A stretch of DNA of 64,000 nucleotides, from IMG/VR virus record IMGVR_UViG_3300036770_007539, positions 237,008 through 301,007 of that record, one strand, 5' to 3'. Under the pieces are notes generated by a model, which made no database searches, had not been told where the DNA came from, and saw only the letters and a list, made by a program, of their open reading frames with translations. How positions within the stretch are numbered: the stretch's first letter is position 1; every line of letters begins with the position of its first letter. The translations under genes were made by a program, and so were the position numbers. Of this stretch, positions 32,988 to 48,400 are shown one piece after another.

Positions 32988-33116
32988 GGAGAGGATTGGT
33001 GGGAGTTGGTGCCAGAAGTAAATAAGAGCCATAAGTACGTTTACCCTGCTCGGGCGTCCGCTTCGACACGCCTGTCATCCCCCTCCATCGCTACCTGCCC
33101 CCTTTTGCCCCATTTC

Positions 33117-33258
33117 TTGACAATCTCTGGTTTGTTGCTATATATATGGTGTGACGACGAGACGAGACGAAACGAAACGCATCGCGAAACGATGCGAAAC
33201 GGAACGAATCGGCTCACGAACGACGCACGCTTGACAAGTGCCGGATCGGCGCTAGGAT
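33117..33258 (+). promoter_or_regulatory. Tandem sigma70-like promoters, unit 1
   Basis: TTGACA 33117-N16-TATATA; TTGACA 33231-N16-TAGGAT. Confidence 0.75.
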
Positions 33259-33340
33259 AGTGGTGTGGCGGATCGTCACGCCGTTGCCGGACGGATTCCG
33301 GTATCTCCCATGGGGGCAACGCCCCCGGAAAGGATCTCCC

Positions 33341-33634
33341 GTGTCAAAGGGAGCGATCCGTAGGAGAGCCCGTCGCTACAGGGAGCACGGGCTCTCCTTC
33401 ATCGTGCGCGTTCGGCTGGCGAAAGCCGCCGAACGCGCGATGAGCGACGAGGGCGGTCTCCGCGCCCTCGGCGCGGAGATGATCACGCATCGCACGTACA
33501 CAATGTGTACGTGCGATGCGTGCGACGAGTGGATCGCCGAGTGGAAGCTCGGCGATTTCACCATCAAAACCGACAGCGGATACATCGTATCCGCTGTCAA
33601 AAACCAACCCGTGCTCCCCTCTTCGGAGGGTTGA
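33341..33634 (+). CDS. Hypothetical protein
   Basis: AAAGGA RBS and GTG start; stop lies inside a repeat hairpin. Confidence 0.55.
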   Translation: MSKGAIRRRARRYREHGLSFIVRVRLAKAAERAMSDEGGLRALGAEMITHRTYTMCTCDACDEWIAEWKLGDFTIKTDSGYIVSAVKNQPVLPSSEG

Positions 33635-33642
33635 GCGCGGGT

Positions 33643-33701
33643 TGCGTCGCCAAGGTCCGCTTTCGAGCGGAGGGGGTTCGATTCCCCCGCGACGCACTAC
33701 C
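33643..33701 (+). ncRNA. Anticodon-less tRNA-like element 1
   Basis: TGCGTCGC/GCGACGCA stem; T-arm GGGGG-TTCGATT-CCCCC. Confidence 0.7.
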
Positions 33702-33761
33702 GCGCCAGACGGATTCTGGTGTTTCTCGAATGGGGGACATATGTCCCCGGAGGATAAGAGC

Positions 33762-34496
33762 ATGATGAAAAAGTACAATATTGCCGCGAAGTCCGCTCCC
33801 GCTCCCGCCCCCGCCGCCGCCCCCGTCGCCGCCGCCGTCCTCGCCGCCCCGGAGAACCCGGGCGTGTGGTTCGACCTCCACATCACGCGATTCAAAGAGG
33901 TGGGTTGCTCGGCTCGGGGCAACTTCGCGATGGTGCCGTCGGGCACCGTCGCGATCCTAGGGGCGAGCGACTACGAAGTCGGAGACGCCCTTTTGTCATA
34001 CGACTTCGATCGGGAGGGGCACACGCCCCTCAGCACCGCCCTCTCGCTCCGCATCTGGGCGGACCACACGTGGTGGGGAAAGGAATACCTCAAAGGCTGG
34101 GGCGCCGCCGCCCGCCGAAAGGCGGAGCGGATCTTGAACGACCTCGCGACGCCCGGTGGTAGCGACGAGGAGGACTACCCGGCATGGGTAGCTGCTGCAA
34201 AGCAGTATACTCTCTACTGCTTCCCCCCGTTCGACTTGTATCAGCGTATTCTTGTTGTGGAGTCTGACAGGTGCGGGTTCATAACCGCCCGCGTCGACGA
34301 GCAGCATCCGGATGAGAGCAAGCCCATGCACGGGGGCTGGCTGGTGCTTGCCCTTGCTCGAACGCAAGACCTGCCATCCAAGACCCGCCAAGCATGGGAG
34401 ATGTGCTCCCCGCTGTGGAGGGCGAGAGCCCTCGAATACATCCGTATGGTTGGATTTAAGGTTACGCCAGGAAGTTTCCTGGCTGATCTGGTCTGA
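33762..34496 (+). CDS. Hypothetical protein with an Ala/Pro-rich N-terminal linker
   Basis: RBS and ATG after a structured leader; 244 aa. Confidence 0.65.
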   Translation: MMKKYNIAAKSAPAPAPAAAPVAAAVLAAPENPGVWFDLHITRFKEVGCSARGNFAMVPSGTVAILGASDYEVGDALLSYDFDREGHTPLSTALSLRIWADHTWWGKEYLKGWGAAARRKAERILNDLATPGGSDEEDYPAWVAAAKQYTLYCFPPFDLYQRILVVESDRCGFITARVDEQHPDESKPMHGGWLVLALARTQDLPSKTRQAWEMCSPLWRARALEYIRMVGFKVTPGSFLADLV

Positions 34497-34538
34497 CCTG
34501 TCTCCCCCGCGCTCCCCTTCGGGGTCGAGCGCGGGGGC

Positions 34539-34611
34539 GTGCATCGCTTTGGAGTCTCGTTCCCCCGCAAGGGGGAACGAGGAGGGGGTTCGATTCCCTC
34601 ACGATGCACCA
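34539..34611 (+). ncRNA. Anticodon-less tRNA-like element 2
   Basis: GTGCATCG/CGATGCAC stem; TTCGATT T-loop; ends ACCA. Confidence 0.75.
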
Positions 34612-34898
34612 TGAGGAACATTCGTTCCTCCCGTTGTCGGACGGATTCCGGCTTCTCGTTGGGGCGCTCGCGCCGCCGAGCGGGAGGCGTTCCGCGCTTC
34701 CCTTCGCGGCGATGAGCGCCGTGAGGGGAATCGCGGTCGCCGCCTCGGCGACCGCGACGTCATCTGACCCATCTGCCCCTGGCTCCCCTCGCAAGAGGGT
34801 CGAGCCGGGGGCATCACCCCGAGGAACATTCGTTCCTCACCCTGACCGGAGGGTGTCCGGTGCTTCCAAGGGGATGAATGTCCCCGGAAAGGATTCTG

Positions 34899-35111
34899 AT
34901 GACCATCGGCGAGGCGGTCGACCGCCTCGTCTCGGAGGGGTACAACCCCGACCGAGACGACCTCCCCGCATGGGCAAAGGGGAAGGGGTTCCGACAGGAA
35001 CTCCGGACCCTCCCCTGCGGGGAGGAGTGCTGCGGGCAAGGGTACGCCCTTGTCCGCGGCAACGACGACGAGGAGGAGGAGCGGTTCATTCCGCTTCCTC
35101 CTCTCTTCTGA
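34899..35111 (+). CDS. Hypothetical protein with CGEECCG motif (paralog of 40796..41086)
   Basis: AAAGGA RBS; shared motif. Confidence 0.6.
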   Translation: MTIGEAVDRLVSEGYNPDRDDLPAWAKGKGFRQELRTLPCGEECCGQGYALVRGNDDEEEERFIPLPPLF

Positions 35112-35163
35112 GACTCGCCCCTGGCTCCCCTCGCAAGAGGGTCGAGCCGGGGGCATTTTTTCT

Positions 35164-35408
35164 GCGCTACATTGGCTATTTGGAGATCTAGTGTATTCGA
35201 AGCCGTACTATAAGAAATATTCTTCTTTCAATGACTTCTTTTTCTTTTCTCTTTTCCAAGAAAGAGGGGGGAGGGGGAGTCAATGAAAAAAAATCTTCTT
35301 TACAAGAGGCTTTACCTTTCTTTTTAGAGATCATGTTTCTTCGAAGCCAGTGCAGGTCTGACATTTCTAATCAATCGTTCGTTTTATTACTCTCTTGATA
35401 GCTAGGGC
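35164..35408. repeat. AT-rich spacer element 1
   Basis: GCGCTACATTGGCT ... AGCCAGTGCAG ... GCTAGGGC. Confidence 0.75.
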
Positions 35409-35433
35409 ATATTGTCGTGTTTGCGTGCGTAAC

Positions 35434-35535
35434 TTGACAAGTGATGGATCGTTGCTAGTATGTAGGGTGTGAGATGAACGCAAACGAGACAACGCAAGCG
35501 CGCTTGATTGACAAGCGGTGCAGCGGTGCTAGTAT
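35434..35535 (+). promoter_or_regulatory. Tandem sigma70-like promoters, unit 2
   Basis: TTGACA 35434-N16-TAGTAT; TTGACA 35508-N16-TAGTAT. Confidence 0.8.
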
Positions 35536-35819
35536 GCGGTCATCGAAGATTCGACGCAGCATAGGGGCGTCGAGACGAGCCGCCGTTAGCGGTGCTCTAA
35601 CAGAGCAGTCACGGGCTAGCCCGTGAATCGAGCCGGGCGATTCCCGGTGGTGAGCAAGGGATCTTGCGGCTTTGCCGGTTGAAGCCGCAAGATCCCTTGC
35701 CCTTGATAATCTGTGGAAGCTGTGCATAATGGTGTGCATGGCTTTGGGGGTCAATCCCCGCTTTGCCGGAGAGTGTCCGGTAACGTCCAAGGGGACGCAT
35801 GTCCCCGGAAAGGACTTTC

Positions 35820-36185
35820 TTGAACCTCCAAAAGAGGATCGAGGAAGTGGACCAGGCGCTCGCGCGTCTGGTCCAGAGCGAGATCGTCGTCGCGCAGGTA
35901 GTGCTCGACGATCTGATCTACCTCCACCGCCCCGCCAGCCGTCAGCACGTCTTGCGACAGCGGGCGGATCGCCTACTCCAGGATCGGGACTGGCGAGTCC
36001 AGCCGATCCTGGAGCGGCGCGAGCGACTGGAGCGCCTTCGCGGGCTGCTCGTCGCTCGCGCCGCACGCGCCGCAGGTCGCGACACCTGCGGCTACTGTGG
36101 GTGGGACAACGGTCCCATCGACCCCGCCACAGGTCGCGGTCTCAGCCGTCAAGGCTGGGATTGCGGCTATTGCGGGGGGAACTAA
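35820..36185 (+). CDS. Coiled-coil protein with a C-terminal Zn finger
   Basis: CGYCGWD..CGYC; TTG start after AAAGGA. Confidence 0.6.
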   Translation: MNLQKRIEEVDQALARLVQSEIVVAQVVLDDLIYLHRPASRQHVLRQRADRLLQDRDWRVQPILERRERLERLRGLLVARAARAAGRDTCGYCGWDNGPIDPATGRGLSRQGWDCGYCGGN

Positions 36186-36243
36186 CCCTTCTCTCCGCAT
36201 CGTTTCCTCCGCGCTCCCCTTCGGGGTCGAGCGCGGGGGAGGC

Positions 36244-36312
36244 TGCATCTTCTCGCTTGGAGGCGAGCGCCCCTTGCGGGGCGGACGGGTTCGATTCCCG
36301 TAGGATGTACCA
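36244..36312 (+). ncRNA. Anticodon-less tRNA-like element 3 (four-arm)
   Basis: TGCATCTT/AGGATGTA; GG-containing D-like loop; 4-nt-loop middle arm; ACGGG-TTCGATT-CCCGT; ends ACCA. Confidence 0.75.
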
Positions 36313-36380
36313 TGAGAGCTTGTCTCTCCCGCGTCGGACGGATTCCGATTGTCTGCGATCGAGAAAGGAGGACTGTCCAC

Positions 36381-36722
36381 ATGGCACAGTACCTCGGAAA
36401 CGCCTTCTCGCTCGGTATGCTCGATTGTCTCACGGCGGAAACGCCTGTGAGCGTCGAGTGTGCCGCCTTCACGCTCGACGAGGCACGCGCCTACGTCGAG
36501 CACAACCGCCCGACCTCGACGGTCGGGCACCTCGACACGGCGGAACTCTTCTCCGCCATGTTGGGGTCTTCCGTGGAGATGCGCCGCGTCTCCACGTCTC
36601 TGATCGGCGGGGATGAGATCCTCGTCGGTCAATACAACGGTCCGCGTCTTCCGGAGGGGGCGAAGAGCCTCCCCGAGGGCGCCAAGGTCCGCTGGATTCT
36701 GGCGCGCATCGTCGCGCGCTGA
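36381..36722 (+). CDS. acrIII-1: DUF1874 / AcrIII-1-like viral ring nuclease (anti-CRISPR type III)
   Basis: YLGNAFS, TLDEAR, STVGHLDTAELFSAMLG, EMRR, GDEIL, RLPEG match the STIV B116 / SIRV1 gp29 / YddF pattern. Confidence 0.8.
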   Translation: MAQYLGNAFSLGMLDCLTAETPVSVECAAFTLDEARAYVEHNRPTSTVGHLDTAELFSAMLGSSVEMRRVSTSLIGGDEILVGQYNGPRLPEGAKSLPEGAKVRWILARIVAR

Positions 36723-36881
36723 GGGTCCACACTCGCCCCTGGTTCCCCGCAAGGGTTGAGCCGGGGGCGTCCCTTCGGGGGAATATCTTTGGAAACTGCC
36801 TGCAAGTTCTGGCTTGTGGGCAGCTTCGAGGGATTGTCCCTTGACCGTAGCTAGGCGGACACCTAGCATCAGGAGGGTCAC

Positions 36882-37106
36882 ATGACTCTTCAAGAAGCAA
36901 TCCGAGAGGTCCGAGACCTTTCGGGAATCCCGGAGGAGCAGCTGCTCCGGGATTGGAACGAGAAGAAGTGCCAGTCTATGGACTGGCACTTCGACACCGA
37001 GACGGTCGAAGACCGTCTCGGAGAGTTGGTGACGTACTTCTACGTGGAAATCATCCCCGAAGGGGATGGTTTCCGCGTCAGGTCTCGAAAAGAGACCTGG
37101 CGATGA
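36882..37106 (+). CDS. Hypothetical protein
   Basis: AGGAGG RBS; 74 aa. Confidence 0.6.
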   Translation: MTLQEAIREVRDLSGIPEEQLLRDWNEKKCQSMDWHFDTETVEDRLGELVTYFYVEIIPEGDGFRVRSRKETWR

Positions 37107-37413
37107 GCCTCGCCCCCGCGTTCCCCTTCGGGGTCGAGCGCGGGGGCACTCGCGGGTTGAGCCGAAAGGTTCCCCGCTCTGACTTCAGGTGGCTCCGACG
37201 CTGATAACGGCGCGGGTTTGATACCCGCTGGAGGACACAGAACATCCTCCTAGCGAAAAGCCGCAGCGGGGAGTGCTTCCGATTCGGGTTACGGTGCAGG
37301 TTTGAGTCCTGCTCTCCCGCGTCACGGGGGTCGGTTGAGACGCCGCCGAACGGAAGCAACGCCTGATTGCAACAACAATAAAGGGGGCGCATATCCCCCG
37401 GAAAGGATATGGT

Positions 37414-38127
37414 TTGAGGACCATCTGCATCGGCGACATCCACGGATGTATCGCCGAGTTTCAAAAGCTCGTGGAGGTTCTCGCGCCCACGAGCGAGGAT
37501 CGGATCGTCCTGTTGGGCGATCTGATCGACAAGGGTCCAAAAAGCGCAGAAGTGGTTCGCTTCGCCCGCGAGATCGGAGCGACCACCATTCAGGGCAACC
37601 ACGAGGAGAAGGCTCTTCGATGGTTTGCCCACGAGAAGACTCGGATCGCCACGGGGAAGGCGAATCCGATGAGCCCTCCCGAGCACAAGGTTCGGGAGTG
37701 GAACACGATCCCCGCCGATGATCGGGAGTGGCTGGCAGCTGCTCCCGTTTACACGGATCTCGGCTCCGGGTTCCTCGCCGTTCACGGCGGGATGCTGCCC
37801 GGGGTCAAGCCACAAGATCACAAGAAGGGAATCCCCCTCCGCCTGAGGTTCGTCAACGACAAGGGCAAGTTTCTGCCCCTCGACGACGACCACGGCGATC
37901 CTGAGGGAGGTATCCCCTGGTACCAGGTCTACGATGGGGAGCACTCCCTGGTGGTGGGTCACACGGTTCACAGCCTGGAGTATCCCCGAATGGATCGTAT
38001 CGGGGATCGGGTGATCTGGCACCTGGACACGGGTTGCGTTCATGGTGGTCGCCTGACGGCGCTCATCCTGGAGACGCAAGAAGTCGTCCAGGTACAAGCG
38101 TCCCAAGTCTACAAGGCGCGGGACTGA
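37414..38127 (+). CDS. Calcineurin-like metallophosphoesterase (ApaH/PrpE/Pnkp-phosphatase-like)
   Basis: GDIHG, GDLIDKG, GNHE, HGG, GHT, LDTGCVHGGRLTA. Confidence 0.9.
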   Translation: MRTICIGDIHGCIAEFQKLVEVLAPTSEDRIVLLGDLIDKGPKSAEVVRFAREIGATTIQGNHEEKALRWFAHEKTRIATGKANPMSPPEHKVREWNTIPADDREWLAAAPVYTDLGSGFLAVHGGMLPGVKPQDHKKGIPLRLRFVNDKGKFLPLDDDHGDPEGGIPWYQVYDGEHSLVVGHTVHSLEYPRMDRIGDRVIWHLDTGCVHGGRLTALILETQEVVQVQASQVYKARD

Positions 38128-38447
38128 GGCGATTGGATTGTTCCTGCGTTCCCCGCAAGGGTTGAGCGCAGGAACAAGTTTCAAGAAGAAAGGAAGAGGA
38201 AGTGGAAATCTGTATGGTTTCGGGTTTTCCGACTCCTTGCGGGTGTTTTGCCTGCCAGGAGTCGGTGGAGCAGGCGCGCGGTGGCAACTGCCACTGCAGC
38301 GCCTGCTGCAAGGTTCGCTTCGGAAACGAAGCGAACGAAGCGAACGAAGGTTGCCGATGGGAGGCGGTTCGACCGCCTCGTCCTCGGCAGTAGGAATCGC
38401 CCCATCGCGTTCCCCCTTGCGGGGTCGAGCGCGATGGGGATTTTTCT

Positions 38448-38683
38448 GCGCTACATTGGCTATATCTGAGATCTTGACATATTCGTTGCTGATGCAGAAT
38501 CTTTTTTTCTTCAATGATTTTTCTTTTTTCTTTTCTACGGGAGGGAGAAACAAGAGAATCAATGAGCTAAGATATTCTTCAAAAGAAACGACTTGTCATT
38601 TATCTTTTACGAGATCAAACACATTCGGAGCCGATGCAGCTCTGATTCGTTTATCAAACGTTTGTTTAGTTCTCAGCTAGGGC
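38448..38683. repeat. AT-rich spacer element 2
   Basis: GCGCTACATTGGCT ... AGCCGATGCAGC ... GCTAGGGC. Confidence 0.75.
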
Positions 38684-38717
38684 TAGGGTGTTCGTTTCTG
38701 CGTGAATCTGTGCAGCC

Positions 38718-38873
38718 TTGACAACGGGCGGATCGATGCTAGATTGTATGGTGTGAGAGAGAGCAACGAATCGAAACAAGCGAGCGAATGAGCGAACGCA
38801 TAAGCCGCGACGGTAGCGGTTAGCGGGTAGCGGATAGCGCGTAGCTTGACACGGTTGGATTCGCTGCTAGGCT
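38718..38873 (+). promoter_or_regulatory. Tandem sigma70-like promoters, unit 3
   Basis: TTGACA 38718-N16-TAGATT; TTGACA 38846-N16-TAGGCT. Confidence 0.75.
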
Positions 38874-38894
38874 TTCTCATAGAAGGGAGGTTAC

Positions 38895-39200
38895 ATGCAA
38901 CAGATTTGTGGAAGATGCTCCGGAAGGGAGAGTCATTCCTGTTGCCCTGATTGCAGGGGAAAGGGCTGGCTTTCCCGCGCGGACGTTCGCGTTCTTCGCT
39001 TGAAGCAGGCGGCATTCTGTTTGCTTCACGAGAAGGCGCGCGAGCATTGGCTCACGCTGAGTGAGCCGCGTCCGCGCCAGGAGTCCTTCGTGCTGGACTA
39101 CGTGTTCAAGCACGAGCAATGGTACTTCGAGACGATCGTCTCGAAGTTTACCCCGGAGCAGAAGCGCACGCTTCTGCGTCGGTTCCCCTGCAATCCCTGA
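38895..39200 (+). CDS. Hypothetical protein with a DnaJ-type Zn motif
   Basis: CGRCSGR..CPDCRGKG. Confidence 0.6.
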   Translation: MQQICGRCSGRESHSCCPDCRGKGWLSRADVRVLRLKQAAFCLLHEKAREHWLTLSEPRPRQESFVLDYVFKHEQWYFETIVSKFTPEQKRTLLRRFPCNP

Positions 39201-39307
39201 ACCGGGTAGAGCGAGCCCTCGCAAGGGGGCTCGTTCCCTACAACCGGATCTGGATCGTGATTGATCTAGGTTCGATTATAGGGATTACCCCTATTGAAAG
39301 GAGGAGC

Positions 39308-39445
39308 ATGAAGTTTCTGGAAAAGCTCTCGAATCGATTGCCCTACGTCGTTCAAGAGTCCCCGCTCGACCCGATCACTTGGATCTTTGCGGTCCCTTTG
39401 CTGGTCCTTTACGGGATTGGCTACATTGTCGGGGGATTGACGTGA
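39308..39445 (+). CDS. Small membrane peptide
   Basis: GAGGAG RBS; hydrophobic C-terminal half. Confidence 0.5.
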   Translation: MKFLEKLSNRLPYVVQESPLDPITWIFAVPLLVLYGIGYIVGGLT

Positions 39446-39615
39446 AAGACGACTTCCTCGACGATATCATCGCAAAGATCGACTCTCTTCGCATCGAGGA
39501 GTGCGAGAGCGGGGCGATCATTCGCAAGCCGGAGGTGAGCGACTTCAAGCGTCCCTCCCTTCTACCCAAGATCATCAACATGCGATCCTTGCTGGTCGAT
39601 TCTAGCAAGTCGTGA
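39442..39615 (+). CDS. Hypothetical protein
   Basis: GTG start overlapping the upstream stop. Confidence 0.45.
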   Translation: MKDDFLDDIIAKIDSLRIEECESGAIIRKPEVSDFKRPSLLPKIINMRSLLVDSSKS

Positions 39616-39621
39616 ACGGCA

Positions 39622-39687
39622 GCATCCCCTCGTGTGGTTGCGAGCACCTGAAAAGGTGGACAGGTTCGATTCCTGTGGGATGCACTA
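39622..39687 (+). ncRNA. tRNA-like element 4 (compact cloverleaf)
   Basis: GCATCCC/GGGATGC; CTCG-TGTGGTTG-CGAG; CACC-TGAAAA-GGTG; ACAGG-TTCGATT-CCTGT; ends ACTA. Confidence 0.75.
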
Positions 39688-39747
39688 CCGCGTCGGACGG
39701 ATTCCGATATCTCTTGAATGGGGGCAAAGCTCCCGGAAGGATTCTTC

Positions 39748-40131
39748 ATGTCGAATGATGACCGTATCGAGCGATTTGCTCGCTCGATCGCCTTGAAGCT
39801 GTACAACGATTCATGGTCCGAGAACGACCTCAAGTACTTTCTCGTACCCCGCCCGCCGCCTGCGTGGGTGGTTTGCAATGTTGCAGCTTCCAATGCGTTC
39901 ATTAGAGGCGGCGAACCTCTGGATCGAGAGGGCATGATCGCTCTTGCTGGTGATTGTGCAAGGAAAATCTTTGCAATCTTCCAGGAGGAGATGTTCATAG
40001 ATTCGGAGGTGACTGTTCCATCTCCCCTCTACCAGCAGGAAGATATCGAGCAGGCGATCTTGACCATCCCTGCGAGGGTGGACGAGGCTCTCGAAGAAGC
40101 GAAGAAACCCCCGATTCGTGCCATCGCATGA
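39748..40131 (+). CDS. Hypothetical protein
   Basis: RBS after a structured leader. Confidence 0.6.
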   Translation: MSNDDRIERFARSIALKLYNDSWSENDLKYFLVPRPPPAWVVCNVAASNAFIRGGEPLDREGMIALAGDCARKIFAIFQEEMFIDSEVTVPSPLYQQEDIEQAILTIPARVDEALEEAKKPPIRAIA

Positions 40132-40293
40132 GTTTGGTGTGGTATCGTCCCTGGCTCCCCTCTTCGGAGGGTCAAGCCGGAGGCACCCCTTCGGGTGAAT
40201 ATCTTTGGAGCCTGCTTGCAAGTTTCTTGTAGGCAGGTTCGAGGGATTATCTCTCGACCGATACCGGACGGATATCCGGCAAAGGGAGACATC

Positions 40294-40629
40294 ATGTACG
40301 ATGATGATGTGCTCGAAGCTCTGCTGGTGCTCTTGACTGAGCATCAGCGGTTGGAGAGGCTTCTGAACGCTCAGAAGTCTCGTGGGATCGCCTTCGAATG
40401 CCTTCTCCGCCAGCAGAAAGCTGTCGAGAAGGCTCTCTTCTCTCGCACGATGCGGGGGAAGATTCGCCGCCAGCTCCGCGACGCCGCCGACAAGGCGGCA
40501 GTCGAGAAGATGCACGCAGCCGCCGCCAAGAAGCTGCGAGAGGCAGAAGCTGAGAAGCGTTGGGAGGCGGAGGAGCGAATGAAGCAAACGTGGCGAGAGC
40601 TTGGCGCGGTCGCCGCCAAATTTCCGTAG
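40294..40629 (+). CDS. Coiled-coil hypothetical protein
   Basis: GGGAG RBS; Glu/Lys/Arg/Ala-rich. Confidence 0.6.
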   Translation: MYDDDVLEALLVLLTEHQRLERLLNAQKSRGIAFECLLRQQKAVEKALFSRTMRGKIRRQLRDAADKAAVEKMHAAAAKKLREAEAEKRWEAEERMKQTWRELGAVAAKFP

Positions 40630-40795
40630 TGTTCTAGATCGAATCCGTCCCATCGCGTTCCCCTTCGGGGTGAGCGCGATGGGGCGACCCTTCATGGGAA
40701 TATCTTTGGAAGCTACCTGCAAGTTTCTTGCAGGTAGCTTCGAGGGATTGTCCCTTGATTGAAACCAGGCAAATACCTGGTCTTTTGGAGGCATC

Positions 40796-41086
40796 ATGGG
40801 CATCATCATCGAAGTTGTGAACCACCCCTCTGCTAACGAAAAAACAAAATGGTGGATGATTGAGACGTTGGAGAACGTCTTCAACATCTCCTTGACTGCT
40901 GAGGAGGATCGCCAGTTGGATATGGTGATGGAGAATTTGCCCGTGGGAGGTACGATTCGTATCTCTCACGACAGTCTTCCTGTGGAGTACTTACTTCACC
41001 GAGCGCAGGAACGAGACGTTCCTTACTCTTGCGGTGAGGAATGCTGCGGAATCGAATCCTACGAATGGGTTCGGTTGTTGACATGA
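40796..41086 (+). CDS. Hypothetical protein with CGEECCG motif
   Basis: GGAGG RBS; paralog of 34899..35111. Confidence 0.65.
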   Translation: MGIIIEVVNHPSANEKTKWWMIETLENVFNISLTAEEDRQLDMVMENLPVGGTIRISHDSLPVEYLLHRAQERDVPYSCGEECCGIESYEWVRLLT

Positions 41087-41206
41087 CTTGGGAGGATCTT
41101 GGGGGAGTGGCAACGTTGCTGCTCCTCTTTCTGATGGTTCTCTTTGCGTGAAGTCCTGTCCGGGGCGAGGTTGAGCCGAAAGGTTCCCTCGTTCCGGGTC
41201 TTTTCT

Positions 41207-41444
41207 GCGCTACACTGGCTATTTCTTTGGAGATCATGCATGTTCAGATTCTTTTTTGTAATCAAAATCTTTCAGTGTTTTTCCTTTTTCTTTTTTCACA
41301 ACATAAGAGAAATAAACAACAATGATAAATGTGGTTTCAATAAACGATTTCTAACGATCATTTCTTTTCAAAGAGACATGAATGTTCAGAGCCTATGCAG
41401 CCCTGATTGTGTTATCAAACGTTCGTTTAGTTCTTAGCTAGGGC
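41207..41444. repeat. AT-rich spacer element 3
   Basis: GCGCTACACTGGCT ... AGCCTATGCAGC ... GCTAGGGC. Confidence 0.75.
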
Positions 41445-41479
41445 ATAAAGCGCGTTAGATCGTGAATATAGGCGTGCGC

Positions 41480-41595
41480 TTGACAAGTAGCTGATCGTTG
41501 CTAGTATGTAGGGTGTGAGAGGGAGAGTGTGAACGGAAACGCTAGCAAGCGCGAACGGGCTAGCGGTTGACAACGGCTCGAGCGTGGTGTATACT
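41480..41595 (+). promoter_or_regulatory. Tandem sigma70-like promoters, unit 4
   Basis: TTGACA 41480-N16-TAGTAT; TTGACA 41567-N17-TATACT. Confidence 0.8.
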
Positions 41596-41615
41596 GCATC
41601 ACGGTAGGAGGAAGC

Positions 41616-41789
41616 ATGTACGTCATTCAGGTAGGCAGGGGACCCAAGGGTTCGTATCGTACCCGCTACACGTTCAGTGCGGAGGATTGGACCAAAGCAA
41701 GCTTCTACTACGCTTGCATCAATGTGGGGTACGGGTACAAGAAGCGCCTTGTGCGCGATGGCAAGGTGATCGCACGCTGCTACAGCTGA
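41616..41789 (+). CDS. 57 aa basic protein (MYVIQVGRGPKGSY...)
   Basis: AGGAGG RBS; hand-translated, below the ORF-track cutoff. Confidence 0.6.
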   Translation: MYVIQVGRGPKGSYRTRYTFSAEDWTKASFYYACINVGYGYKKRLVRDGKVIARCYS

Positions 41790-41803
41790 AAGGACAAGTG
41801 AGC

Positions 41804-41959
41804 ATGAAAGTAACGCCTGCAATCGTCAAGGCTCAGATTCGTGCGGCGAGGGCGCAAGCCTCTCGCCTGAAGAAGATGATTGCGCTGCTGGAGCAGCGCG
41901 ACCGCGCATACAGGCACTTGGAGGAGCTTGGTGATAGATTGGCTCACTTGAAGAAGTGA
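41804..41959 (+). CDS. Small coiled-coil protein
   Basis: AAGGA RBS. Confidence 0.5.
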   Translation: MKVTPAIVKAQIRAARAQASRLKKMIALLEQRDRAYRHLEELGDRLAHLKK

Positions 41960-42068
41960 GCCGGAATGGGCGAGCCCTTGCGGGCTCGTTCCCTGCAATC
42001 GGACCTGGATCGTCACTGATCTAGGTTCGACTCCAGGGAATCTTTCCTGGTCTTTCGGAGGTGTGTTT

Positions 42069-42530
42069 ATGGTCAAGGTCGTCATCATGCAAGGTGTCCC
42101 TGGTTCGGGCAAGTCGAGCTACGTCAAGTCGCTGCGACCCGTGGCGACGGTGGTCTGCTCGGCGGATACGTTCTTCGAGTCGTGGAGCCCGGAAACGGGT
42201 GCTACCTATAACTTCGACCCGTCCAAGCTCGGCGAGGCGCACGGCGAGTGCCTGTTGAGTTTCGTGGACGCCATGGAATATGCCAACCAAGACGGCGATA
42301 CGGTGGTGGTGGATAACACCAACACCACCGCCATGGAGATTGCACCCTACATGGCGCTCGCGAACGCCTACGGGTGCGAGGTTGAGATCGTGCGAGTCCA
42401 GTGCGACCCCGAGATCGCCGCTGCTCGCAACATTCACGGCGTTCCGCTGGCTTCGATCCGCCGCATGGCAGACAACATCGCGAACTTCCACGCCCCGCCA
42501 TTCTGGCGGTTCAAGCTGACGGAAGTGTGA
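42069..42530 (+). CDS. P-loop kinase (AAA_33 / polynucleotide kinase / N4BP2-like)
   Basis: GVPGSGKS Walker A; SADTFF; VVVDNTN; ARNIHGVP. Confidence 0.85.
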   Translation: MVKVVIMQGVPGSGKSSYVKSLRPVATVVCSADTFFESWSPETGATYNFDPSKLGEAHGECLLSFVDAMEYANQDGDTVVVDNTNTTAMEIAPYMALANAYGCEVEIVRVQCDPEIAAARNIHGVPLASIRRMADNIANFHAPPFWRFKLTEV

Positions 42531-42632
42531 ACTAGGACGGGCGAGCCTGCAAGGGCTCGCTCCCTGCAATCGGGATTCGATACGGATCGAATCTCGATTC
42601 TAGGGAATGTCCCCTAGCAACATGGAGGCTTT

Positions 42633-42890
42633 ATGCCCTTGTTCGTTTCTTTCGAGGATGACAACATCGACCCCACCTACGCCGACGCTTCCGACGCGGT
42701 GATCGTTTCTGCGCTGCACGATGCGGCGTTGGAAACCAATCCGTGTGTGGGTCGCGGAGTGCGGCATCGTGCTCCGGTCGCGCCTCGCACCGAAAAGGAG
42801 ATCATCGCCTTCGCCAAGGTGATGGGATGGCGAACGGAAGGATCGGGGAGTGATCTTGTGATCTACCCCGCTGTTTCCGAGGATGACTGA
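42633..42890 (+). CDS. Hypothetical protein (paralog of 47019..47270)
   Basis: MPLFVSF.D...DPTYA shared. Confidence 0.7.
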   Translation: MPLFVSFEDDNIDPTYADASDAVIVSALHDAALETNPCVGRGVRHRAPVAPRTEKEIIAFAKVMGWRTEGSGSDLVIYPAVSEDD

Positions 42891-42963
42891 TAGGACGGGC
42901 GAGCCCCTTGGCAACAAGGGGCTCGCATCTCTCGACACTCAATCCGAAACGTGAAAGGCTGAT

Positions 42964-43128
42964 GTGGATCCGAAAGAAAAAAAGCAATCTATGTTGGACC
43001 GAATGAACGCGAATAACGCGGAGATTCATCGGAAGATGAAAGAAGCTGCGGAGAAGAATGGGGAAATGGATTCCTCGCTGCGCGAGGCTATTCTCAAGAT
43101 CGGAGCAAAACCCTCTTCGGAGGGTTGA
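42964..43128 (+). CDS. 54 aa hypothetical protein
   Basis: Hand-translated; ends PSSEG inside a repeat hairpin. Confidence 0.45.
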   Translation: MDPKEKKQSMLDRMNANNAEIHRKMKEAAEKNGEMDSSLREAILKIGAKPSSEG

Positions 43129-43185
43129 GCGCGGGCACCAATCGCCGCAAGGTGCGGCGATGATCAAACGTGAAAGGCTGGAATA

Positions 43186-43443
43186 ATGTTCTCGTTGAAA
43201 AATGTTTCAGTTCAGCGGACATTCATCCTGATGATCGGGGATCGTATTCAAGGCGTCGCCAAAAGCGAGCAAGAACTACGCCCCATTGCTAAGGAGGCGT
43301 GGCGTCGGTACGGGGTCGCGCGCCCTCAATCTCCCGGAAAGGTTTTCGTGGTAGAAACCACGATTCCCTTTTTGAAGGGAATCGAATGGGTGGAGACTAC
43401 ACCACCGAAGTTCGTGTGCGATATCGACCTGGATAGTGATTGA
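43186..43443 (+). CDS. Hypothetical protein
   Basis: 85 aa ORF. Confidence 0.55.
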   Translation: MFSLKNVSVQRTFILMIGDRIQGVAKSEQELRPIAKEAWRRYGVARPQSPGKVFVVETTIPFLKGIEWVETTPPKFVCDIDLDSD

Positions 43444-43526
43444 TCCAGGTTCGATGAAGGAAGTTTGAACCACAATGAGAAGCGAGCCCTCGCAAGGGGG
43501 CTTGCTTCCTAGACAAAGGAAGCTCC

Positions 43527-43988
43527 ATGACGTTATCAAGAGATGTCATGATCGAAGCATACAACGATGCGGTGGCAGCAGCATACGGGGCAATCCGTTC
43601 GCGCTGCCCTGTAGAACTGGCTACCGCTGCCGATCTTCTCGCAAAAACTTCACCTTCGGAGGAATACTTCGATAATCACGCCATCACTCAGCACAAGACC
43701 TTGACGCATCACGTCGAGTTTTATCGTGCTCAAGAACGCGACGACGACTTTTTGAATGCTCTGTTCGACGAGTTTGCCGACAATCACGACATGGATCTCG
43801 ACGACGACGACGCAGCTAGTTTCGCTCGTAGTTGTGTAAACAACTACGGCTCGAGCTTTCTTGTTTATCAAGAGGCGCGAGGTTCGTTTCCTGGTGGCGA
43901 ATGTACGGCGGGGGGAATCGCCTCTGCCTGGAATATCATTCGCGATCAGATCAAGTTTGCAAAGAAGGAAAAGGAGGTATTGCCATGA
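43527..43988 (+). CDS. Hypothetical acidic protein
   Basis: AAGGAAG RBS; 153 aa. Confidence 0.6.
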   Translation: MTLSRDVMIEAYNDAVAAAYGAIRSRCPVELATAADLLAKTSPSEEYFDNHAITQHKTLTHHVEFYRAQERDDDFLNALFDEFADNHDMDLDDDDAASFARSCVNNYGSSFLVYQEARGSFPGGECTAGGIASAWNIIRDQIKFAKKEKEVLP

Positions 43989-44398
43989 ACAAGTACGCCA
44001 GCATCAAGGAATACGTCGAAGCTCTCTACCGAGAGGGCAACAATCAGGTTGCGGATACGTTGCAGCGTATCCGTTCGGGCGAGTCCAACGACGTTTCCGA
44101 GGTTTTCAAACCTACGGAAGCTCTCCGAAACGCAGGCTTCGAGGTAATGCCTCAAGAAGTCACCGATCCGGTCCTGGAAGCCTTCGGATTGCGCTCTTTC
44201 GGAGAGGGTGCTTTTGCGGTATACGACATGTATGGTCGAACCCCTTATCACAAGCTCTCCAGTGCGGAGATTCTGGAGCGTTTCCGTGCCAAGACGGTCA
44301 CGCATGAAGTCGATGTTCTTTGCGAGTTTCTTCGCTACTATCTCGAAGGCGTTTTTCGTCGCGCCATGTACGAAGGCGAGCACTATCAAAAGAAGTAA
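43985..44398 (+). CDS. Hypothetical protein
   Basis: AAGGAGG RBS; ATGA coupling. Confidence 0.65.
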   Translation: MNKYASIKEYVEALYREGNNQVADTLQRIRSGESNDVSEVFKPTEALRNAGFEVMPQEVTDPVLEAFGLRSFGEGAFAVYDMYGRTPYHKLSSAEILERFRAKTVTHEVDVLCEFLRYYLEGVFRRAMYEGEHYQKK

Positions 44399-44525
44399 CT
44401 GAATCGTAAGGGCGAGCCTCTTCGGGGGCTCGCTCCCTGCAATCGAATATTGACTCCCGGCATGTTCTGGGATACAGTCGATGTTCGATTCTAGGGAGTT
44501 TCCCCTAGTTTCTTCGGAGGAAAGC

Positions 44526-44735
44526 ATGCGTTGTTTCATGTATGGCGAAGTTCACACGATGGACGGCAAGCGCAAGATGGTGCGACGTTACTTCGACGGA
44601 TCGGGGAACGTCTACGCAGCTGCACTTCAAGAACTTTACAAGCGTAAAGACAAGGGTTCCCCTTGGAGAGGTGATGCAGTCAACGTCATCACTCCTTTGG
44701 GACAGAGGGTGATCGTCGAAGTTCCTCATCTGTAA
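44526..44735 (+). CDS. Hypothetical protein
   Basis: GGAGG RBS after a switch-like leader. Confidence 0.6.
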   Translation: MRCFMYGEVHTMDGKRKMVRRYFDGSGNVYAAALQELYKRKDKGSPWRGDAVNVITPLGQRVIVEVPHL

Positions 44736-44788
44736 CCAATCTCAACACCTGGAGCATGTGTCTAAACTGCTCCTTTCCAAAGGAGAAT

Positions 44789-44914
44789 ATGTCCAAACGC
44801 AAGAACTCCGATGAAGTTCTCGAAGCTCGAATCGCTCATCGTCTCGCCATGATTGCCGCTTTGGAGGCGGAAATCGCGGAACTTCGCAAGCAACAAGGAA
44901 AGGATAACCAATGA
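44789..44914 (+). CDS. 41 aa coiled-coil peptide
   Basis: AAAGGAG RBS; hand-translated. Confidence 0.5.
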   Translation: MSKRKNSDEVLEARIAHRLAMIAALEAEIAELRKQQGKDNQ

Positions 44915-45189
44915 CCGCTCGATCTGCTCGTCGACAGCACTCCAAGTATCTGCGTGAGATGGGTGTGCCCTTCATCATGCGCCAGAGTCTCGCCAAGACT
45001 CGCTACCAAGGATTGATGGATGACCATTACTTGAGTCGAAAAACTCAGCTGGTCACTACCTACTACGACAGCAACGGTTGCGATTGCTGTCCTCCTTCCA
45101 AGATTCAATATTGGGAGGTGGTGGTGCAGAAAAAGACCTATCGAATCCAAACGGAAGATGGTCGAATCCAATCTTGCCTCAAGTTCTGA
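44911..45189 (+). CDS. Hypothetical protein
   Basis: ATGA coupling; 92 aa. Confidence 0.55.
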   Translation: MTARSARRQHSKYLREMGVPFIMRQSLAKTRYQGLMDDHYLSRKTQLVTTYYDSNGCDCCPPSKIQYWEVVVQKKTYRIQTEDGRIQSCLKF

Positions 45190-45237
45190 GGCTTGGGGAC
45201 GCATCTGGGGCTGAACGGTCCTGGGTGCGTCCCCGAA

Positions 45238-45489
45238 GCGCTACATTGGCTCAACAGTGATCTTTGCATGTTCAGAACGTTCTTTATGCAAAAGCATCTT
45301 TTTTCTTTCAATGATTGCTATTTCTTCTTTCAAGTAACGACATGAATAATCAATGAATGACAAGTATCTTTCAAACAAAGAACTTTCAAATCATATATCT
45401 TTTCAACCAGATCTTTGTTCGTTCAGAGCCTATGCAGTCCTGACTTTTTCACTGGCTTTTTGACGGTTTTCGTCCCTTCTGGCTAGGGC
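45238..45489. repeat. AT-rich spacer element 4
   Basis: GCGCTACATTGGCT ... AGCCTATGCAGT ... GCTAGGGC. Confidence 0.75.
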
Positions 45490-45522
45490 TAGATCGCTTG
45501 TTTTCGCGCATATTCGCGCGCC

Positions 45523-45649
45523 TTGACAATCGGCGGATCGTTGCTAGTATGTAGGGTGTGAGAGAGAGCACGAACGAACGAATGAACGAACGAACGCTAG
45601 CACGACGCTAGCGCGATGCGTTTGACGCGGCTCGATTCGATGCTACGTT
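45523..45649 (+). promoter_or_regulatory. Tandem sigma70-like promoters, unit 5
   Basis: TTGACA 45523-N16-TAGTAT; TTGACG 45622-N16-TACGTT. Confidence 0.75.
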
Positions 45650-45683
45650 GCAAGTGTCGCCGATACATGGCGAGGGAGGCAAT

Positions 45684-46157
45684 ATGTGGATTGACCAGCG
45701 CGAGATCGACCGAGAGAACGAGAACTACAGCCTGGAGTCGCACCAGGAGGTAGTTCAGGAACAGGCTCGGAAAGAGATGATCGCGAGCTTGACCAAGCTC
45801 TGGGAGGAGACGGATCGCAAGATCGACGGCAAACGCGAAGCTCTCACGAGTGAGAGCTTCGACGAATACATCCGTCGGATCGCAGATGATAACGCCTATG
45901 AGAAGCGCGAAGCTCTCTCGGAGAAGCTCGGACGCAAACTCACCCGTGATGAGGAGCACGAAATCTTTCGCGAGGAGAAGGATAGCATCATTCAAAAGAT
46001 CAATGGCGAGATCGAGATCCTGGTCGCCAAGCTCGACATGATCGAAACGCAACTTCGCAGCCTGGGTGCTCGCAAGGCACGTCCTTACGAGCACTGGAAC
46101 GAGGAGGAGCACATCGTTCAGTATCTGGAAACCAGGAACGACAACCGCGACTACTGA
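45684..46157 (+). CDS. Acidic coiled-coil protein (paralog of 53676..54170)
   Basis: Shared LGAR..RPYEH.NE.E..YLE.R..NDR C-terminus. Confidence 0.7.
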   Translation: MWIDQREIDRENENYSLESHQEVVQEQARKEMIASLTKLWEETDRKIDGKREALTSESFDEYIRRIADDNAYEKREALSEKLGRKLTRDEEHEIFREEKDSIIQKINGEIEILVAKLDMIETQLRSLGARKARPYEHWNEEEHIVQYLETRNDNRDY

Positions 46158-46212
46158 ACCCAAGATCCCGGCTCGCCCTTCGGGGCGGGTCGGGTTCGAC
46201 AACGGAGGAATC

Positions 46213-46485: not shown

Positions 46486-46587
46486 TCTGGACGGGCGAGC
46501 CCGCAAGGGCTCGCTCCCTGCAATCGGGATTCGATACGGATCGAATCTCGATTCTAGGGAATGTCCCCTAGCAACGGAGGTATTGTG

Positions 46588-46908: not shown

Positions 46909-47018
46909 TATCCAGAACTAGGACGGGCGAGCCCGCAAGGGCTCGCTCCCTGCAATCGGGATTCGACACTTGTCGAGTTTCGATTCTAGGGAATGTCCCC
47001 TAGCACCAAGGAGGCTTT

Positions 47019-47848: not shown

Positions 47849-47902
47849 AACAACGCACCTGGGCATGTGTCTAAACTGCCCTTTTCTTGAAAGGAGAATG
47901 TC

Positions 47903-48390: not shown

Positions 48391-48400
48391 AAGAGATACC

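What the first reader, a model, noticed from the sequence alone, without database searches (positions are those of the whole stretch)
36381..36722. AcrIII-1-like ring nuclease in the early region
Seen: the DUF1874 pattern with the GH motif (STVGHLDTAE), an Arg at the NR position and RLPEG. Known: AcrIII-1 degrades cyclic tetra-adenylate and neutralises type III CRISPR. Inference: the host has cA4-dependent type III CRISPR or CBASS, and this arm is a counter-defence region in which the neighbouring small ORFs are candidate new anti-defence proteins.
Basis: partly seen in the sequence, partly recalled or inferred. Interest (0 to 1): 0.75.

Follow-up and report, generated by a model that had tools for sequence, protein, structure and literature searches.

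The report
Phage ring nuclease gene, early arm
A 113-residue gene in a GC-rich arm of small genes in an uncultivated 300-kb phage is a well-conserved member of the known AcrIII-1/DUF1874 ring-nuclease family, which most likely destroys the cyclic tetra-adenylate alarm signal of type III CRISPR. The gene is an ordinary new family member; the RNA-structured region around it is the unusual part.

Summary
Window 36381-36722 (+) is a real 113-aa gene with a strong ribosome-binding site and GC3 of 0.82. It matches Pfam PF08960 just above the cut-off, and a profile of its homologues matches the solved DUF1874 proteins strongly. Its predicted fold and dimer match SIRV1 gp29 (AcrIII-1). The catalytic His and most cA4-contact residues are conserved. 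It is therefore very probably a cA4 ring nuclease, a new member of a known family.

The record is a 301-kb, 33% GC phage from a subsurface metagenome. The gene lies in a 52-65% GC arm of about 19 kb. That arm holds about 35-40 small same-strand genes (about 42 if the run is followed to 56 kb), eight near-identical sigma-70-type promoters and dense structured RNA. Early expression and a counter-defence role are therefore plausible but unproven. The arm is not an assembly chimera.

The host is unknown, so host type III CRISPR cannot be tested. The CBASS alternative has no support. Almost all neighbouring genes have no recognisable relatives; the exceptions are a Pnkp-like phosphatase and a kinase.

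The more novel feature is five anticodon-less tRNA-like elements with base-pair covariation. One sits 69 nt upstream of this gene and may act as an RNA-processing signal.

The parts
36381..36722 (+). DUF1874/AcrIII-1-like ring nuclease gene, 113 aa. Catalytic H50; cA4-contact equivalents N7, S10, T53, R69, Q84, R89; E92 is a further conserved position.
36364..36371 (+). Ribosome-binding site AAAGGAGG, 9 nt before the ATG.
36334..36348 (+). Small conserved hairpin (stem 4 bp, loop ACGGAUU). It also follows the tRNA-like elements at about 33704, 34636 and 39690, and the promoter at 33288.
   Evidence: read directly from the sequence
36245..36312 (+). tRNA-like element TLS3: 7-bp acceptor stem, two tetraloop hairpins, T arm with loop UUCGAUU, discriminator A, then CCA. 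It lies 69 nt upstream of the ATG. An orthologue with compensatory changes lies upstream of the 82%-identical gene in L004.
36202..36243 (+). GC-rich bulged hairpin of a repeated family (copies at 33606, 34500, 36202 and 37109; degenerate copies at 34998 and 38400). It lies directly 5' of the tRNA-like element.
   Evidence: (D13, D18)
35799..36185 (+). Upstream ORF of 128 aa, helical with a C-terminal CxxC...CxxC zinc ribbon. It is probably the first cistron of the same transcription unit. Function unknown.
35434..35535 (+). Two tandem sigma-70-type promoters (TTGACA, 16 nt, TAGTAT, with TG before the -10). These are the nearest promoters upstream of the gene.
   Evidence: (D5, D11)
36735..36864 (+). 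Structured 3' intergenic region (z = -5.2). It contains a bulged hairpin, a stem-loop with a weak T-rich tail at 36770-36782, and a repeat element also present at 40168 and 40669. A weaker promoter-like site lies at 36841-36869.
   Evidence: (D19, D20)
36882..37106 (+). Downstream ORF of 74 aa, no recognisable relatives.
37414..38127 (+). Calcineurin-like metallophosphoesterase, 237 aa. It aligns over its full length to the phosphatase domain of bacterial Pnkp and to PrpE/ApaH, all below the equivalog cut-offs.
42069..42530 (+). AAA_33 P-loop kinase, 153 aa, resembling polynucleotide kinase. It is conserved in both related loci and lies directly after the DUF1874 gene in L019.
33030..52300 (+). 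GC-rich arm (52-65% GC in a 33% GC genome) holding about 35-40 small + strand genes, eight repeated promoters, five tRNA-like elements and several hairpin repeat families. It has a sharp left edge next to an 11-nt tandem repeat. On the right, GC falls gradually towards tRNA genes.

Best explanation
The gene encodes a homodimeric ring nuclease of the DUF1874 (AcrIII-1/Crn2) family. By analogy with SIRV1 gp29, the dimer clamps one cyclic tetra-adenylate (cA4) molecule in its central cleft. His50 of each subunit protonates the leaving group, and cA4 is cut twice into A2>P. This removes the second messenger that a type III CRISPR-Cas complex makes when it detects phage RNA, so CARF/SAVED effectors stay inactive.

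The gene is probably transcribed by host RNA polymerase from strong sigma-70-type promoters about 0.9 kb upstream, as the second cistron of a short unit. The transcript is probably processed at the tRNA-like element in front of the gene. Early expression would make the enzyme available before cA4 builds up.

Shown computationally: family membership, fold, conserved active site, predicted dimer, phage origin and promoter-rich context. Inferred only: enzymatic activity, timing of expression, RNA processing and the host's defence repertoire.
For: Family and fold:
- Pfam PF08960 above the cut-off.
- Profile against PDB: E 4e-18 to 7e-13 for the four solved viral DUF1874 proteins, with weaker hits to Csx1-Crn2.
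- AlphaFold2 model with pLDDT 93.2. Its 16 significant Foldseek PDB hits are all DUF1874 proteins, with TM 0.71-0.77 by query length.

Active site:
- gp29 H47, the residue whose H47A change costs more than 2500-fold in activity, aligns with invariant H50.
- The cA4 contacts N8, S11, T50, R66, Q81 and R85 listed align with N7, S10, T53, R69, Q84 and R89. All are invariant or at least 90% conserved among 36 homologues.

Dimer: predicted homodimer score 0.84 against a best control of 0.00. That mark was reached by 20 of 30 solved homodimers and 1 of 23 monomers.

Viral rather than cellular context:
- The record carries RIIA, a DnaE-like polymerase and SbcC.
- No Csx1, CARF or SAVED was found in the record.

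Early or accessory context:
- Eight near-identical consensus promoters occur only in this arm.
- Gene content is mosaic in relatives, but DUF1874 and the kinase are retained.
- Homologues elsewhere lie near an AcrVA2-like gene and a NADAR gene.
Against: - No biochemical or expression data exist, and the phage and its host are uncultivated.
- The Pfam score is only 0.3 bits above the cut-off for the single sequence, and the whole-genome scan gave 25.6 bits, just under it.
- Two gp29 contact positions differ: N13 aligns with G12 and S49 with D52. The lid loop carries a clade-specific N-G-P insertion and a duplicated LPEGA motif, so substrate preference could differ.
- SIRV2 gp37 shows that an active viral ring nuclease need not act as an anti-CRISPR in its native infection.
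- Promoter matches are consensus hits, not measured transcription.
Confidence: 0.62

Rival explanations
1. The protein is an active or partly active ring nuclease, but its selected role in this phage is not to block type III CRISPR. It could bind or inhibit another host protein, as SIRV2 gp37 does with a lysine methyltransferase, or it could degrade a different cyclic or linear oligonucleotide.
For: In its native infection, SIRV2 gp37 is not an anti-CRISPR and has a second activity. This clade has a lid-loop insertion and two changed contact residues. The host's defence systems are unknown.
Against: The cA4-contact residues and catalytic His are invariant across a diverse clade, which points to selection on that chemistry. 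The gp37 partner is restricted to Crenarchaeota. The reason gp37 fails as an anti-CRISPR is late expression, whereas this gene sits behind strong sigma-70-type promoters.
Confidence: 0.22
2. The enzyme is a Crn2-type housekeeping ring nuclease that tunes a cA4 signalling system carried by the phage itself or captured from a host CRISPR locus. In this reading it is not a counter-defence weapon.
For: DUF1874 domains do occur in cellular type III loci and fused to Csx1. Huge phages sometimes carry CRISPR-Cas (own knowledge).
Against: No Csx1 HEPN, CARF (Cas_APE2256) or SAVED match was found in the 301-kb record. The controls for two of these searches did not ring, and the record is about 71% complete. 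The gene stands alone among unrelated small genes, not in a cas operon.
Confidence: 0.06
3. The GC-rich segment does not belong to the phage. It is an assembly chimera or a recent foreign insertion, so 'phage early region' is an artefact.
For: There is a 30-point GC jump at 33.0 kb next to a tandem repeat. Depth in the arm is 2-3 times that of the left flank.
Against: A 12.8-kb Logan contig crosses the edge without a mismatch, and a contig from a different sample spans 32886-33198. GC falls gradually on the right. A repeat motif is shared between the arm and the 40% GC flank. Two related loci show the same high-to-low GC gradient ending in the same tRNA genes. No integrase or transposase was found among the ORFs scanned.
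Confidence: 0.04
4. The protein is a small nucleic-acid-binding protein without catalytic function, as several archaeal virus homologues are annotated ('DNA binding protein').
For: GenBank annotations of the Betalipothrixvirus homologues read this way.
Against: Those annotations predate the ring-nuclease work. The catalytic His and the cA4 contacts are conserved here.
Confidence: 0.03

Closest known systems
AcrIII-1 SIRV1 gp29 (PDB 2x4i; H47A-cA4 complex 6scf)
   Same: Same Pfam family and fold (TM about 0.74-0.77). Same catalytic His and the same Asn, Ser, Thr, Arg, Gln and Arg cA4 contacts. Similar length, predicted homodimer and viral origin.
   Different: Only 22-26% identity. This one is from a bacterial-type phage (sigma-70 promoters, Shine-Dalgarno sites) rather than an archaeal virus. 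It has an N-G-P insertion and a duplicated LPEGA in the lid loop, with N13->Gly and S49->Asp. Activity is untested.
AFV3-109 (PDB 2j6b), Betalipothrixvirus
   Same: Best single-sequence PDB match (E 3.7e-9, 32% identity in the structural alignment), including the R-L-P-E-G motif.
   Different: The N-terminal strand region aligns less well. It comes from an archaeal virus and has no biochemical assay of its own known to me.
Bacterial and phage DUF1874 members: B. subtilis ICEBs1 YddF and the Thermoanaerobacterium phage THSA-485A protein
   Same: They show the family works in bacterial mobile elements. YddF cleaves cA4. THSA-485A is the nearest relative among deposited phages.
   Different: THSA-485A is only 34% identical. 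Only 7 distinct phage or virus genomes among 50,697 GenBank phage records have any match, so this clade is known only from metagenomes.
Crn2 (Marinitoga Csx1-Crn2 fusion, PDB 8y7f/8y7g)
   Same: Same fold and active-site His.
   Different: Crn2 is a cellular, CRISPR-encoded self-limiting domain. This gene is a stand-alone phage gene with no cas neighbours.
For the tRNA-like elements: plant mitochondrial t-elements, the MALAT1 mascRNA and the bacterial Y RNA YrlA
   Same: All are anticodon-less tRNA mimics with an acceptor stem and a T arm, embedded in longer transcripts. t-elements mark mRNA ends (PMC1920247). A 7-bp acceptor stem makes M. smegmatis YrlA an RNase P substrate.
   Different: These five copies lie in the 5' leaders of phage genes. 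Each is preceded by a GC hairpin and followed by a small conserved hairpin. No Ro60 or RtcB gene is present in the phage. No Rfam family reaches its threshold.

Membership tests
DUF1874 / PF08960 (STIV_B116-like) | Sequence match to the family profile at or above the curated cut-off | tested here: met
   26.3 bits against a cut-off of 26, which is borderline for the single sequence; the six-frame genome scan gave 25.6. All 98 homologues carry PF08960. The homologue profile hits four solved family members at E 4e-18 to 7e-13.
DUF1874 / AcrIII-1 | The family's distinctive fold | tested here: met
   AlphaFold2 model with pLDDT 93.2 and pTM 0.86. The 16 significant Foldseek PDB hits are all DUF1874 proteins; the next hit has E 0.27.
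AcrIII-1 ring nuclease | The absolutely conserved catalytic histidine (gp29 H47) in the G-H motif | tested here: met
   H50 aligns with gp29 H47, which is Ala in the 6scf variant. It is invariant in 36 homologues.
AcrIII-1 ring nuclease | cA4-contact side chains (gp29 N8, S11, N13, S49, T50, R66, Q81, R85) | tested here: met
   Six of eight are conserved (N7, S10, T53, R69, Q84, R89). N13->G12 and S49->D52 differ, consistently across this clade.
AcrIII-1 ring nuclease | Homodimer forming the cA4 cleft | tested here: met
   Predicted homodimer score 0.84 against a best control of 0.00. The mark was reached by 20 of 30 solved homodimers and 1 of 23 monomers. The result may partly reflect the model's memory of solved relatives.
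AcrIII-1 ring nuclease | Rapid, specific cleavage of cA4 to A2>P that depends on the His | not testable with these tools
   This needs purified protein and a cA4 assay.
Anti-CRISPR (functional class, as opposed to Crn2) | Encoded by a virus or mobile element, not in a cas locus | tested here: met
   The record is a 301-kb phage with RIIA, DnaE-like polymerase and SbcC. No Csx1, CARF or SAVED was found in it. The junction of the GC-rich arm with the phage is bridged by independent contigs.
Anti-CRISPR (functional class) | Expressed early and strongly enough to act before the signal builds up (the criterion) | tested here: inconclusive
   Two consensus sigma-70-type promoters with an extended -10 lie 0.85-0.95 kb upstream, members of an eight-copy promoter family restricted to this arm. 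No transcript data were available.
Anti-CRISPR (functional class) | The host uses cA4-dependent type III CRISPR and the gene protects the phage from it | not testable with these tools
   The host is unknown. The nearest phage polymerase is about 30% identical, and homologues are scattered over metagenome bins of many phyla.
tRNA (for the upstream element) | Cloverleaf with D arm, anticodon arm and anticodon | tested here: not met
   ARAGORN calls none of the five and the Rfam tRNA model does not reach its threshold. Tetraloop hairpins replace the D and anticodon arms. The acceptor and T arms are present with covariation.

The most novel reading that the evidence does not exclude
The ring-nuclease gene may be one cassette of a previously undescribed kind of phage host-takeover module. 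This is a GC-rich arm, possibly terminally redundant, written in G/C-ending codons inside an AT-rich jumbo phage.

In this reading, anticodon-less tRNA-like elements act as RNase P/RNase Z punctuation marks. Each is flanked by a 3'-protective GC hairpin and a 5' leader hairpin. They would cut polycistronic early transcripts into individually stabilised mRNAs, as a bacteriophage counterpart of mitochondrial tRNA punctuation. Alternatively, the elements could be decoys for tRNA-targeting defences. Cassettes would be gained and lost by recombination between the hairpin repeats.
Probability: 0.3. Interest if true: 0.75.

Novelty: new member of a known kind. Interest (0 to 1): 0.38.

Why it matters
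As an annotation, this adds a confident, metagenome-only clade of AcrIII-1-type ring nucleases carried by huge phages. It implies that cA4 signalling is a relevant barrier for such phages in the subsurface.

It also bears on a live argument about whether viral DUF1874 proteins are real anti-CRISPRs in native infections. Here the gene sits behind strong host-type promoters in an accessory arm, which is the configuration the sceptical study says is needed. This lineage would therefore be a good test case if a host is found.

The surroundings are the more interesting part. They include an early arm with GC3 of 0.6-0.8 in a genome with GC3 of about 0.2, covarying tRNA-like elements in mRNA leaders, and RNA end-healing enzymes next to the ring nuclease. 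Together these point to unexplored RNA-level strategies in phage takeover.

Tried and rejected
- **Chimeric assembly.** Rejected after laying Logan contigs from four runs on 30800-36700: the edge is bridged in two samples.
- **Organelle or giant-virus origin.** I considered this because of the group I intron, tRNAs, collagen repeats and UvdE. I rejected it after finding RIIA, a DnaE-type polymerase and SbcC PHROG hits, Shine-Dalgarno sites and sigma-70 promoters.
- **The 136-aa reading of the ORF.** Rejected.
- **Close relatives in viral contigs.** Single-protein pattern searching found none. Megablast of 15 kb against GenBank phages found none.
- **Function of neighbours.** Pfam, PHROGs and NCBIfam scans of about 25 arm ORFs gave three hits. 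Atlas look-ups of two neighbours gave only a zinc-ribbon likeness, or nothing.
- **Host identification.** The polymerase gave only about 30% identity. DUF1874 homologues in genome bins are scattered across CPR, Omnitrophota and Clostridia and are probably mis-binned phage contigs. Neither gave a host.
- **Y-RNA idea for the tRNA-like elements.** There is no Ro60/TROVE or RtcB in the record.
- **Phage-borne cA4 signalling.** No SAVED, CARF or Csx1 was found. Two of these searches had silent controls, so that part is weak.
- **Right edge of the high-depth zone.** The terminal-repeat idea could not be checked there.

Full report
**1. The observation**

Window 36381-36722 (+) is an ATG-initiated ORF of 113 codons, preceded by AAAGGAGG 9 nt upstream.

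The stretch is 63-66% GC, so long spurious ORFs overlap it on both strands. This frame has the GC pattern of a real gene, 0.65/0.49/0.82 at codon positions 1/2/3. It also has 98 database homologues that all carry PF08960. The alternative start at 36312 (136 aa) is not supported by the homologues' N-termini.

**2. Family, fold and active site**

The sequence evidence is as follows:
- Pfam gives PF08960 STIV_B116-like at E 8e-6 and 26.3 bits, against a cut-off of 26.
- PHROGs gives phrog_5063 at 5.5e-13.
- The single sequence finds AFV3-109 in the PDB at 3.7e-9.
- A profile of 36 homologues finds AFV3-109 (4e-18), SIRV1 gp29 (2e-17), its H47A-cA4 complex 6scf (3e-15) and STIV B116 (7e-13). It also finds the Crn2 domain of Marinitoga Csx1-Crn2 weakly.

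An AlphaFold2 model built on that alignment has mean pLDDT 93.2. Its 16 significant Foldseek hits in the PDB are all DUF1874 structures, with TM 0.71-0.77 by query length. The next hit has E 0.27.

In the founding paper, H47 of gp29 is the general acid, and H47A costs more than 2500-fold in activity. N8, S11, N13, S49, T50, R66, Q81 and R85 contact cA4. In the profile alignment these correspond here to H50, N7, S10, G12, D52, T53, R69, Q84 and R89. All except the G12 and D52 positions keep the gp29 residue. N7, S10, H50, Q84 and R89 are invariant in the 36-sequence alignment, and D52, T53, R69 and E92 are at least 90% conserved.

This clade adds N-G-P before the lid arginine and duplicates the LPEGA motif.

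A homodimer is predicted with score 0.84 against a best control of 0.00. That mark was reached by 20 of 30 solved homodimers and 1 of 23 monomers, and memory of solved relatives may contribute.

I conclude that the protein is a DUF1874 member with an intact ring-nuclease site. Activity itself is inferred.

**3. What genome this is**

The window is the last 64 kb of a 301-kb IMG/VR virus record, estimated 71% complete, from a subsurface metagenome. The record encodes RIIA, a DnaE-type DNA polymerase and an SbcC-like nuclease. The window also holds collagen/LamG fibre-like proteins, UvdE, two tRNAs and a group I intron.

The polymerase is only about 30% identical to anything in GenBank phages. 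Among 50,697 deposited phage records, only seven distinct genomes have a DUF1874 match. The best is Thermoanaerobacterium phage THSA-485A at 34%. The host is unknown.

**4. The arm in which the gene lies**

The genome is 33% GC, but window 33.0-52 kb is 52-65% GC. GC3 of the arm's genes is 0.6-0.82, against 0.17-0.31 in the main genome.

About 42 small genes, all on the + strand, fill 33.7-56 kb. Eight copies of one promoter lie at 33228, 35431, 35505, 38715, 41477, 45520, 49232 and 51622. The promoter is TTGACA, 16 nt, TAGTAT, preceded by TG and followed by a conserved GTAGGGTGTGAGA. Copies occur nowhere else in the 301 kb. This is the signature of genes read by the host polymerase, so 'early region' is a reasonable but unmeasured inference.

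The arm is not an assembly artefact:
- A 12.8-kb Logan contig crosses the sharp left edge (about 33,030) without a mismatch.
- A contig from another sample spans 32886-33198.
- A second repeat motif is shared by the arm and its 40% GC right flank.
- Two related metagenomic loci, L004 and L019, have DUF1874 proteins 82% and 68% identical. Both show the same GC decline from about 0.6 to 0.4, ending at tRNA-Leu(CAA)/tRNA-Lys(UUU) genes.

K-mer depth in the arm is 2-3 times that of the left flank in two samples. A collapsed long terminal repeat, as in T5-like pre-early regions, would explain a factor of two. GC-dependent sequencing bias is the alternative. I could not examine the right edge.

**5. 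The transcription unit of the gene**

The unit, in order, is:
- Promoters at 35434 and 35508.
- A 128-aa zinc-ribbon ORF at 35799-36185.
- A GC-rich bulged hairpin at 36202-36243.
- A tRNA-like element at 36245-36312.
- A small hairpin with loop ACGGAUU at 36334-36348.
- The ribosome-binding site and the DUF1874 gene.
- A strongly structured 3' region (z = -5.2) containing a stem-loop with a weak T tail.

**6. Neighbours and the counter-defence claim**

Of about 25 arm ORFs scanned, only four gave hits:
- The DUF1874 gene itself.
- A metallophosphoesterase at 37414-38127. It aligns over its full length to the Pnkp phosphatase domain (E 2e-22) and to PrpE/ApaH, all below the cut-offs.
- An AAA_33 kinase at 42069-42530, with polynucleotide-kinase-like PHROGs.
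- One PHROG family of unknown function.

Atlas look-ups of two neighbours gave nothing usable.

Comparison with L004 and L019 shows a mosaic. Several cassettes are shared in shuffled order, and only the DUF1874 gene and the kinase are present in all three. In L019 the two are adjacent. The phage also has an Rnl2-type RNA ligase elsewhere. A kinase, a phosphatase and a ligase are the parts of an RNA end-healing and sealing pathway, as T4 uses against anticodon nucleases (own knowledge).

More distant homologues lie near an AcrVA2-like gene and a NADAR gene. These facts fit an anti-defence arm, but the small ORFs remain uncharacterised.

**7. Does it work as an anti-CRISPR?**

The family binds cA4 specifically.

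A preprint on SIRV2 gp37 shows that an active viral ring nuclease fails as an anti-CRISPR in native infection because it is a middle/late gene. The same study argues that a strong early promoter and an anti-defence neighbourhood are the discriminating features. This gene appears to meet both, on computational evidence only.

No CARF, Csx1 or SAVED gene was found in the phage record (two of the controls were silent). This argues against a Crn2-type self-regulatory role.

My estimates are about 0.9 that this is a competent cA4 ring nuclease, and about 0.6 that its selected role is early neutralisation of type III CRISPR signalling.

**8. The tRNA-like elements**

Five elements lie on the + strand at 33644-33697, 34540-34612, 36245-36312, 39622-39685 and 48401-48459. 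Each has the following parts:
- A 7-bp acceptor stem.
- One or two tetraloop hairpins in place of the D and anticodon arms.
- A 5-bp T stem with loop UUCGAUU.
- Discriminator A, then CCA, CA or CUA.

ARAGORN does not call them. Rfam gives only sub-threshold hits to mascRNA, tRNA-Sec and, on the opposite strand, a plastid leader.

On an alignment that includes the L004 orthologue, 97% of cells pair. Six of 12 pairs show compensatory changes, against 32-56% pairing when partners are slid. The element upstream of the DUF1874 gene differs from its L004 orthologue by a compensatory change in the T stem (G-C to A-U) and two wobble-to-Watson-Crick changes in the acceptor stem.

A covariance model finds only these five copies in the whole genome. 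Four of the five sit 55-69 nt before a start codon.

A 7-bp acceptor stem with a T arm is the main RNase P determinant. Plant mitochondrial t-elements use the same principle to define mRNA ends. I therefore propose that these elements punctuate early polycistronic RNA. The upstream GC hairpin would protect the new 3' end, and the small hairpin would protect the new 5' end. This is inference only. A decoy role against tRNA-directed defences is an alternative.

**9. Verdict**

The gene is a new member of a known kind. The structured, GC-rich arm around it deserves a separate look.

Noticed in passing
window 33644-33697, 34540-34612, 36245-36312, 39622-39685, 48401-48459 (+): Five anticodon-less tRNA-like elements with an acceptor stem, T arm and tetraloop hairpins. 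They show base-pair covariation and mostly lie 55-69 nt upstream of start codons. No tRNA finder calls them and no Rfam family reaches its threshold. One has an orthologue with compensatory changes in L004:19-92.
   Followed up: partly
window 33030-52300: A GC-rich arm (52-65% GC, GC3 0.6-0.82) inside a 33% GC phage (GC3 about 0.2). The same gradient occurs in related loci L004 and L019. K-mer depth is 2-3 times that of the left flank in two samples, which suggests a collapsed long terminal repeat or sequencing bias.
   Followed up: partly
window 30000-32400 (genes on the - strand: 30008-30475, 30629-31243, 31683-32306): The + strand has only 4-8% G here, so three consecutive genes are written almost without C in their mRNA (GC skew about -0.67). 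This is the only such stretch in the 301-kb genome. No family hits. Unexplained.
   Followed up: partly
window 32600-33000: About 30 imperfect copies of an 11-nt tandem unit (GGATAGAATAC-like) with almost no C on the + strand. The array abuts the sharp left edge of the GC-rich arm and could be a terminus or packaging-related array.
   Followed up: no
window 34815-35116: A 77-aa ORF cassette between two identical 40-nt hairpin repeats (34775-34814 and 35117-35156). Its depth is about 10 against about 190 in one run, and 1.5 against about 12 in another. Only a minority of the population carries it, which suggests cassette gain or loss by recombination between hairpin repeats.
   Followed up: partly
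window 37414-38127 and 42069-42530; genome 22091-22573: A Pnkp/PrpE/ApaH-like metallophosphoesterase and an AAA_33 polynucleotide-kinase-like gene lie in the same arm as the ring nuclease, and an Rnl2-type RNA ligase lies elsewhere in the phage. Together they could form an RNA end-healing and sealing kit against RNA-cutting defences. The kinase is adjacent to the DUF1874 gene in L019.
   Followed up: partly
window 59106-59398 (+): A 75-nt tRNA with anticodon UAA and no long variable arm is interrupted in the anticodon loop by a 218-nt group I intron (Rfam 59.9 bits; ARAGORN with introns allowed).
   Followed up: yes
window 41956-50770 (eight or more copies, e.g. 42527-42620, 46481-46575, 46913-47005, 47269-47375, 50665-50770): A second intergenic module: a GC hairpin with a GCAA or similar loop, followed by a long stem built on CCCUGCAAUCGA...UCGAUUCUAGGG. 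It contains a T-loop-like GGUUCGAUUC and may derive from the tRNA-like elements.
   Followed up: no
window 44745-56520 (nine copies): The repeated motif CACCTGGGTAAGTGTATAAACTGCC occurs only on the + strand. It spans the right part of the arm and the 40% GC flank and may be a second promoter or regulatory class.
   Followed up: no
window 24632-29921 (- strand): Three consecutive Laminin_G_3 (LamG) proteins. The two largest, about 700 aa each, also carry long collagen triple-helix repeats and are probably tail fibres. A glycosyltransferase/methyltransferase fusion lies at 23355-24629 (+).
   Followed up: no
L035:9351-10303: A Saccharibacteria-binned contig carries two tandem DUF1874 genes.
   Followed up: no
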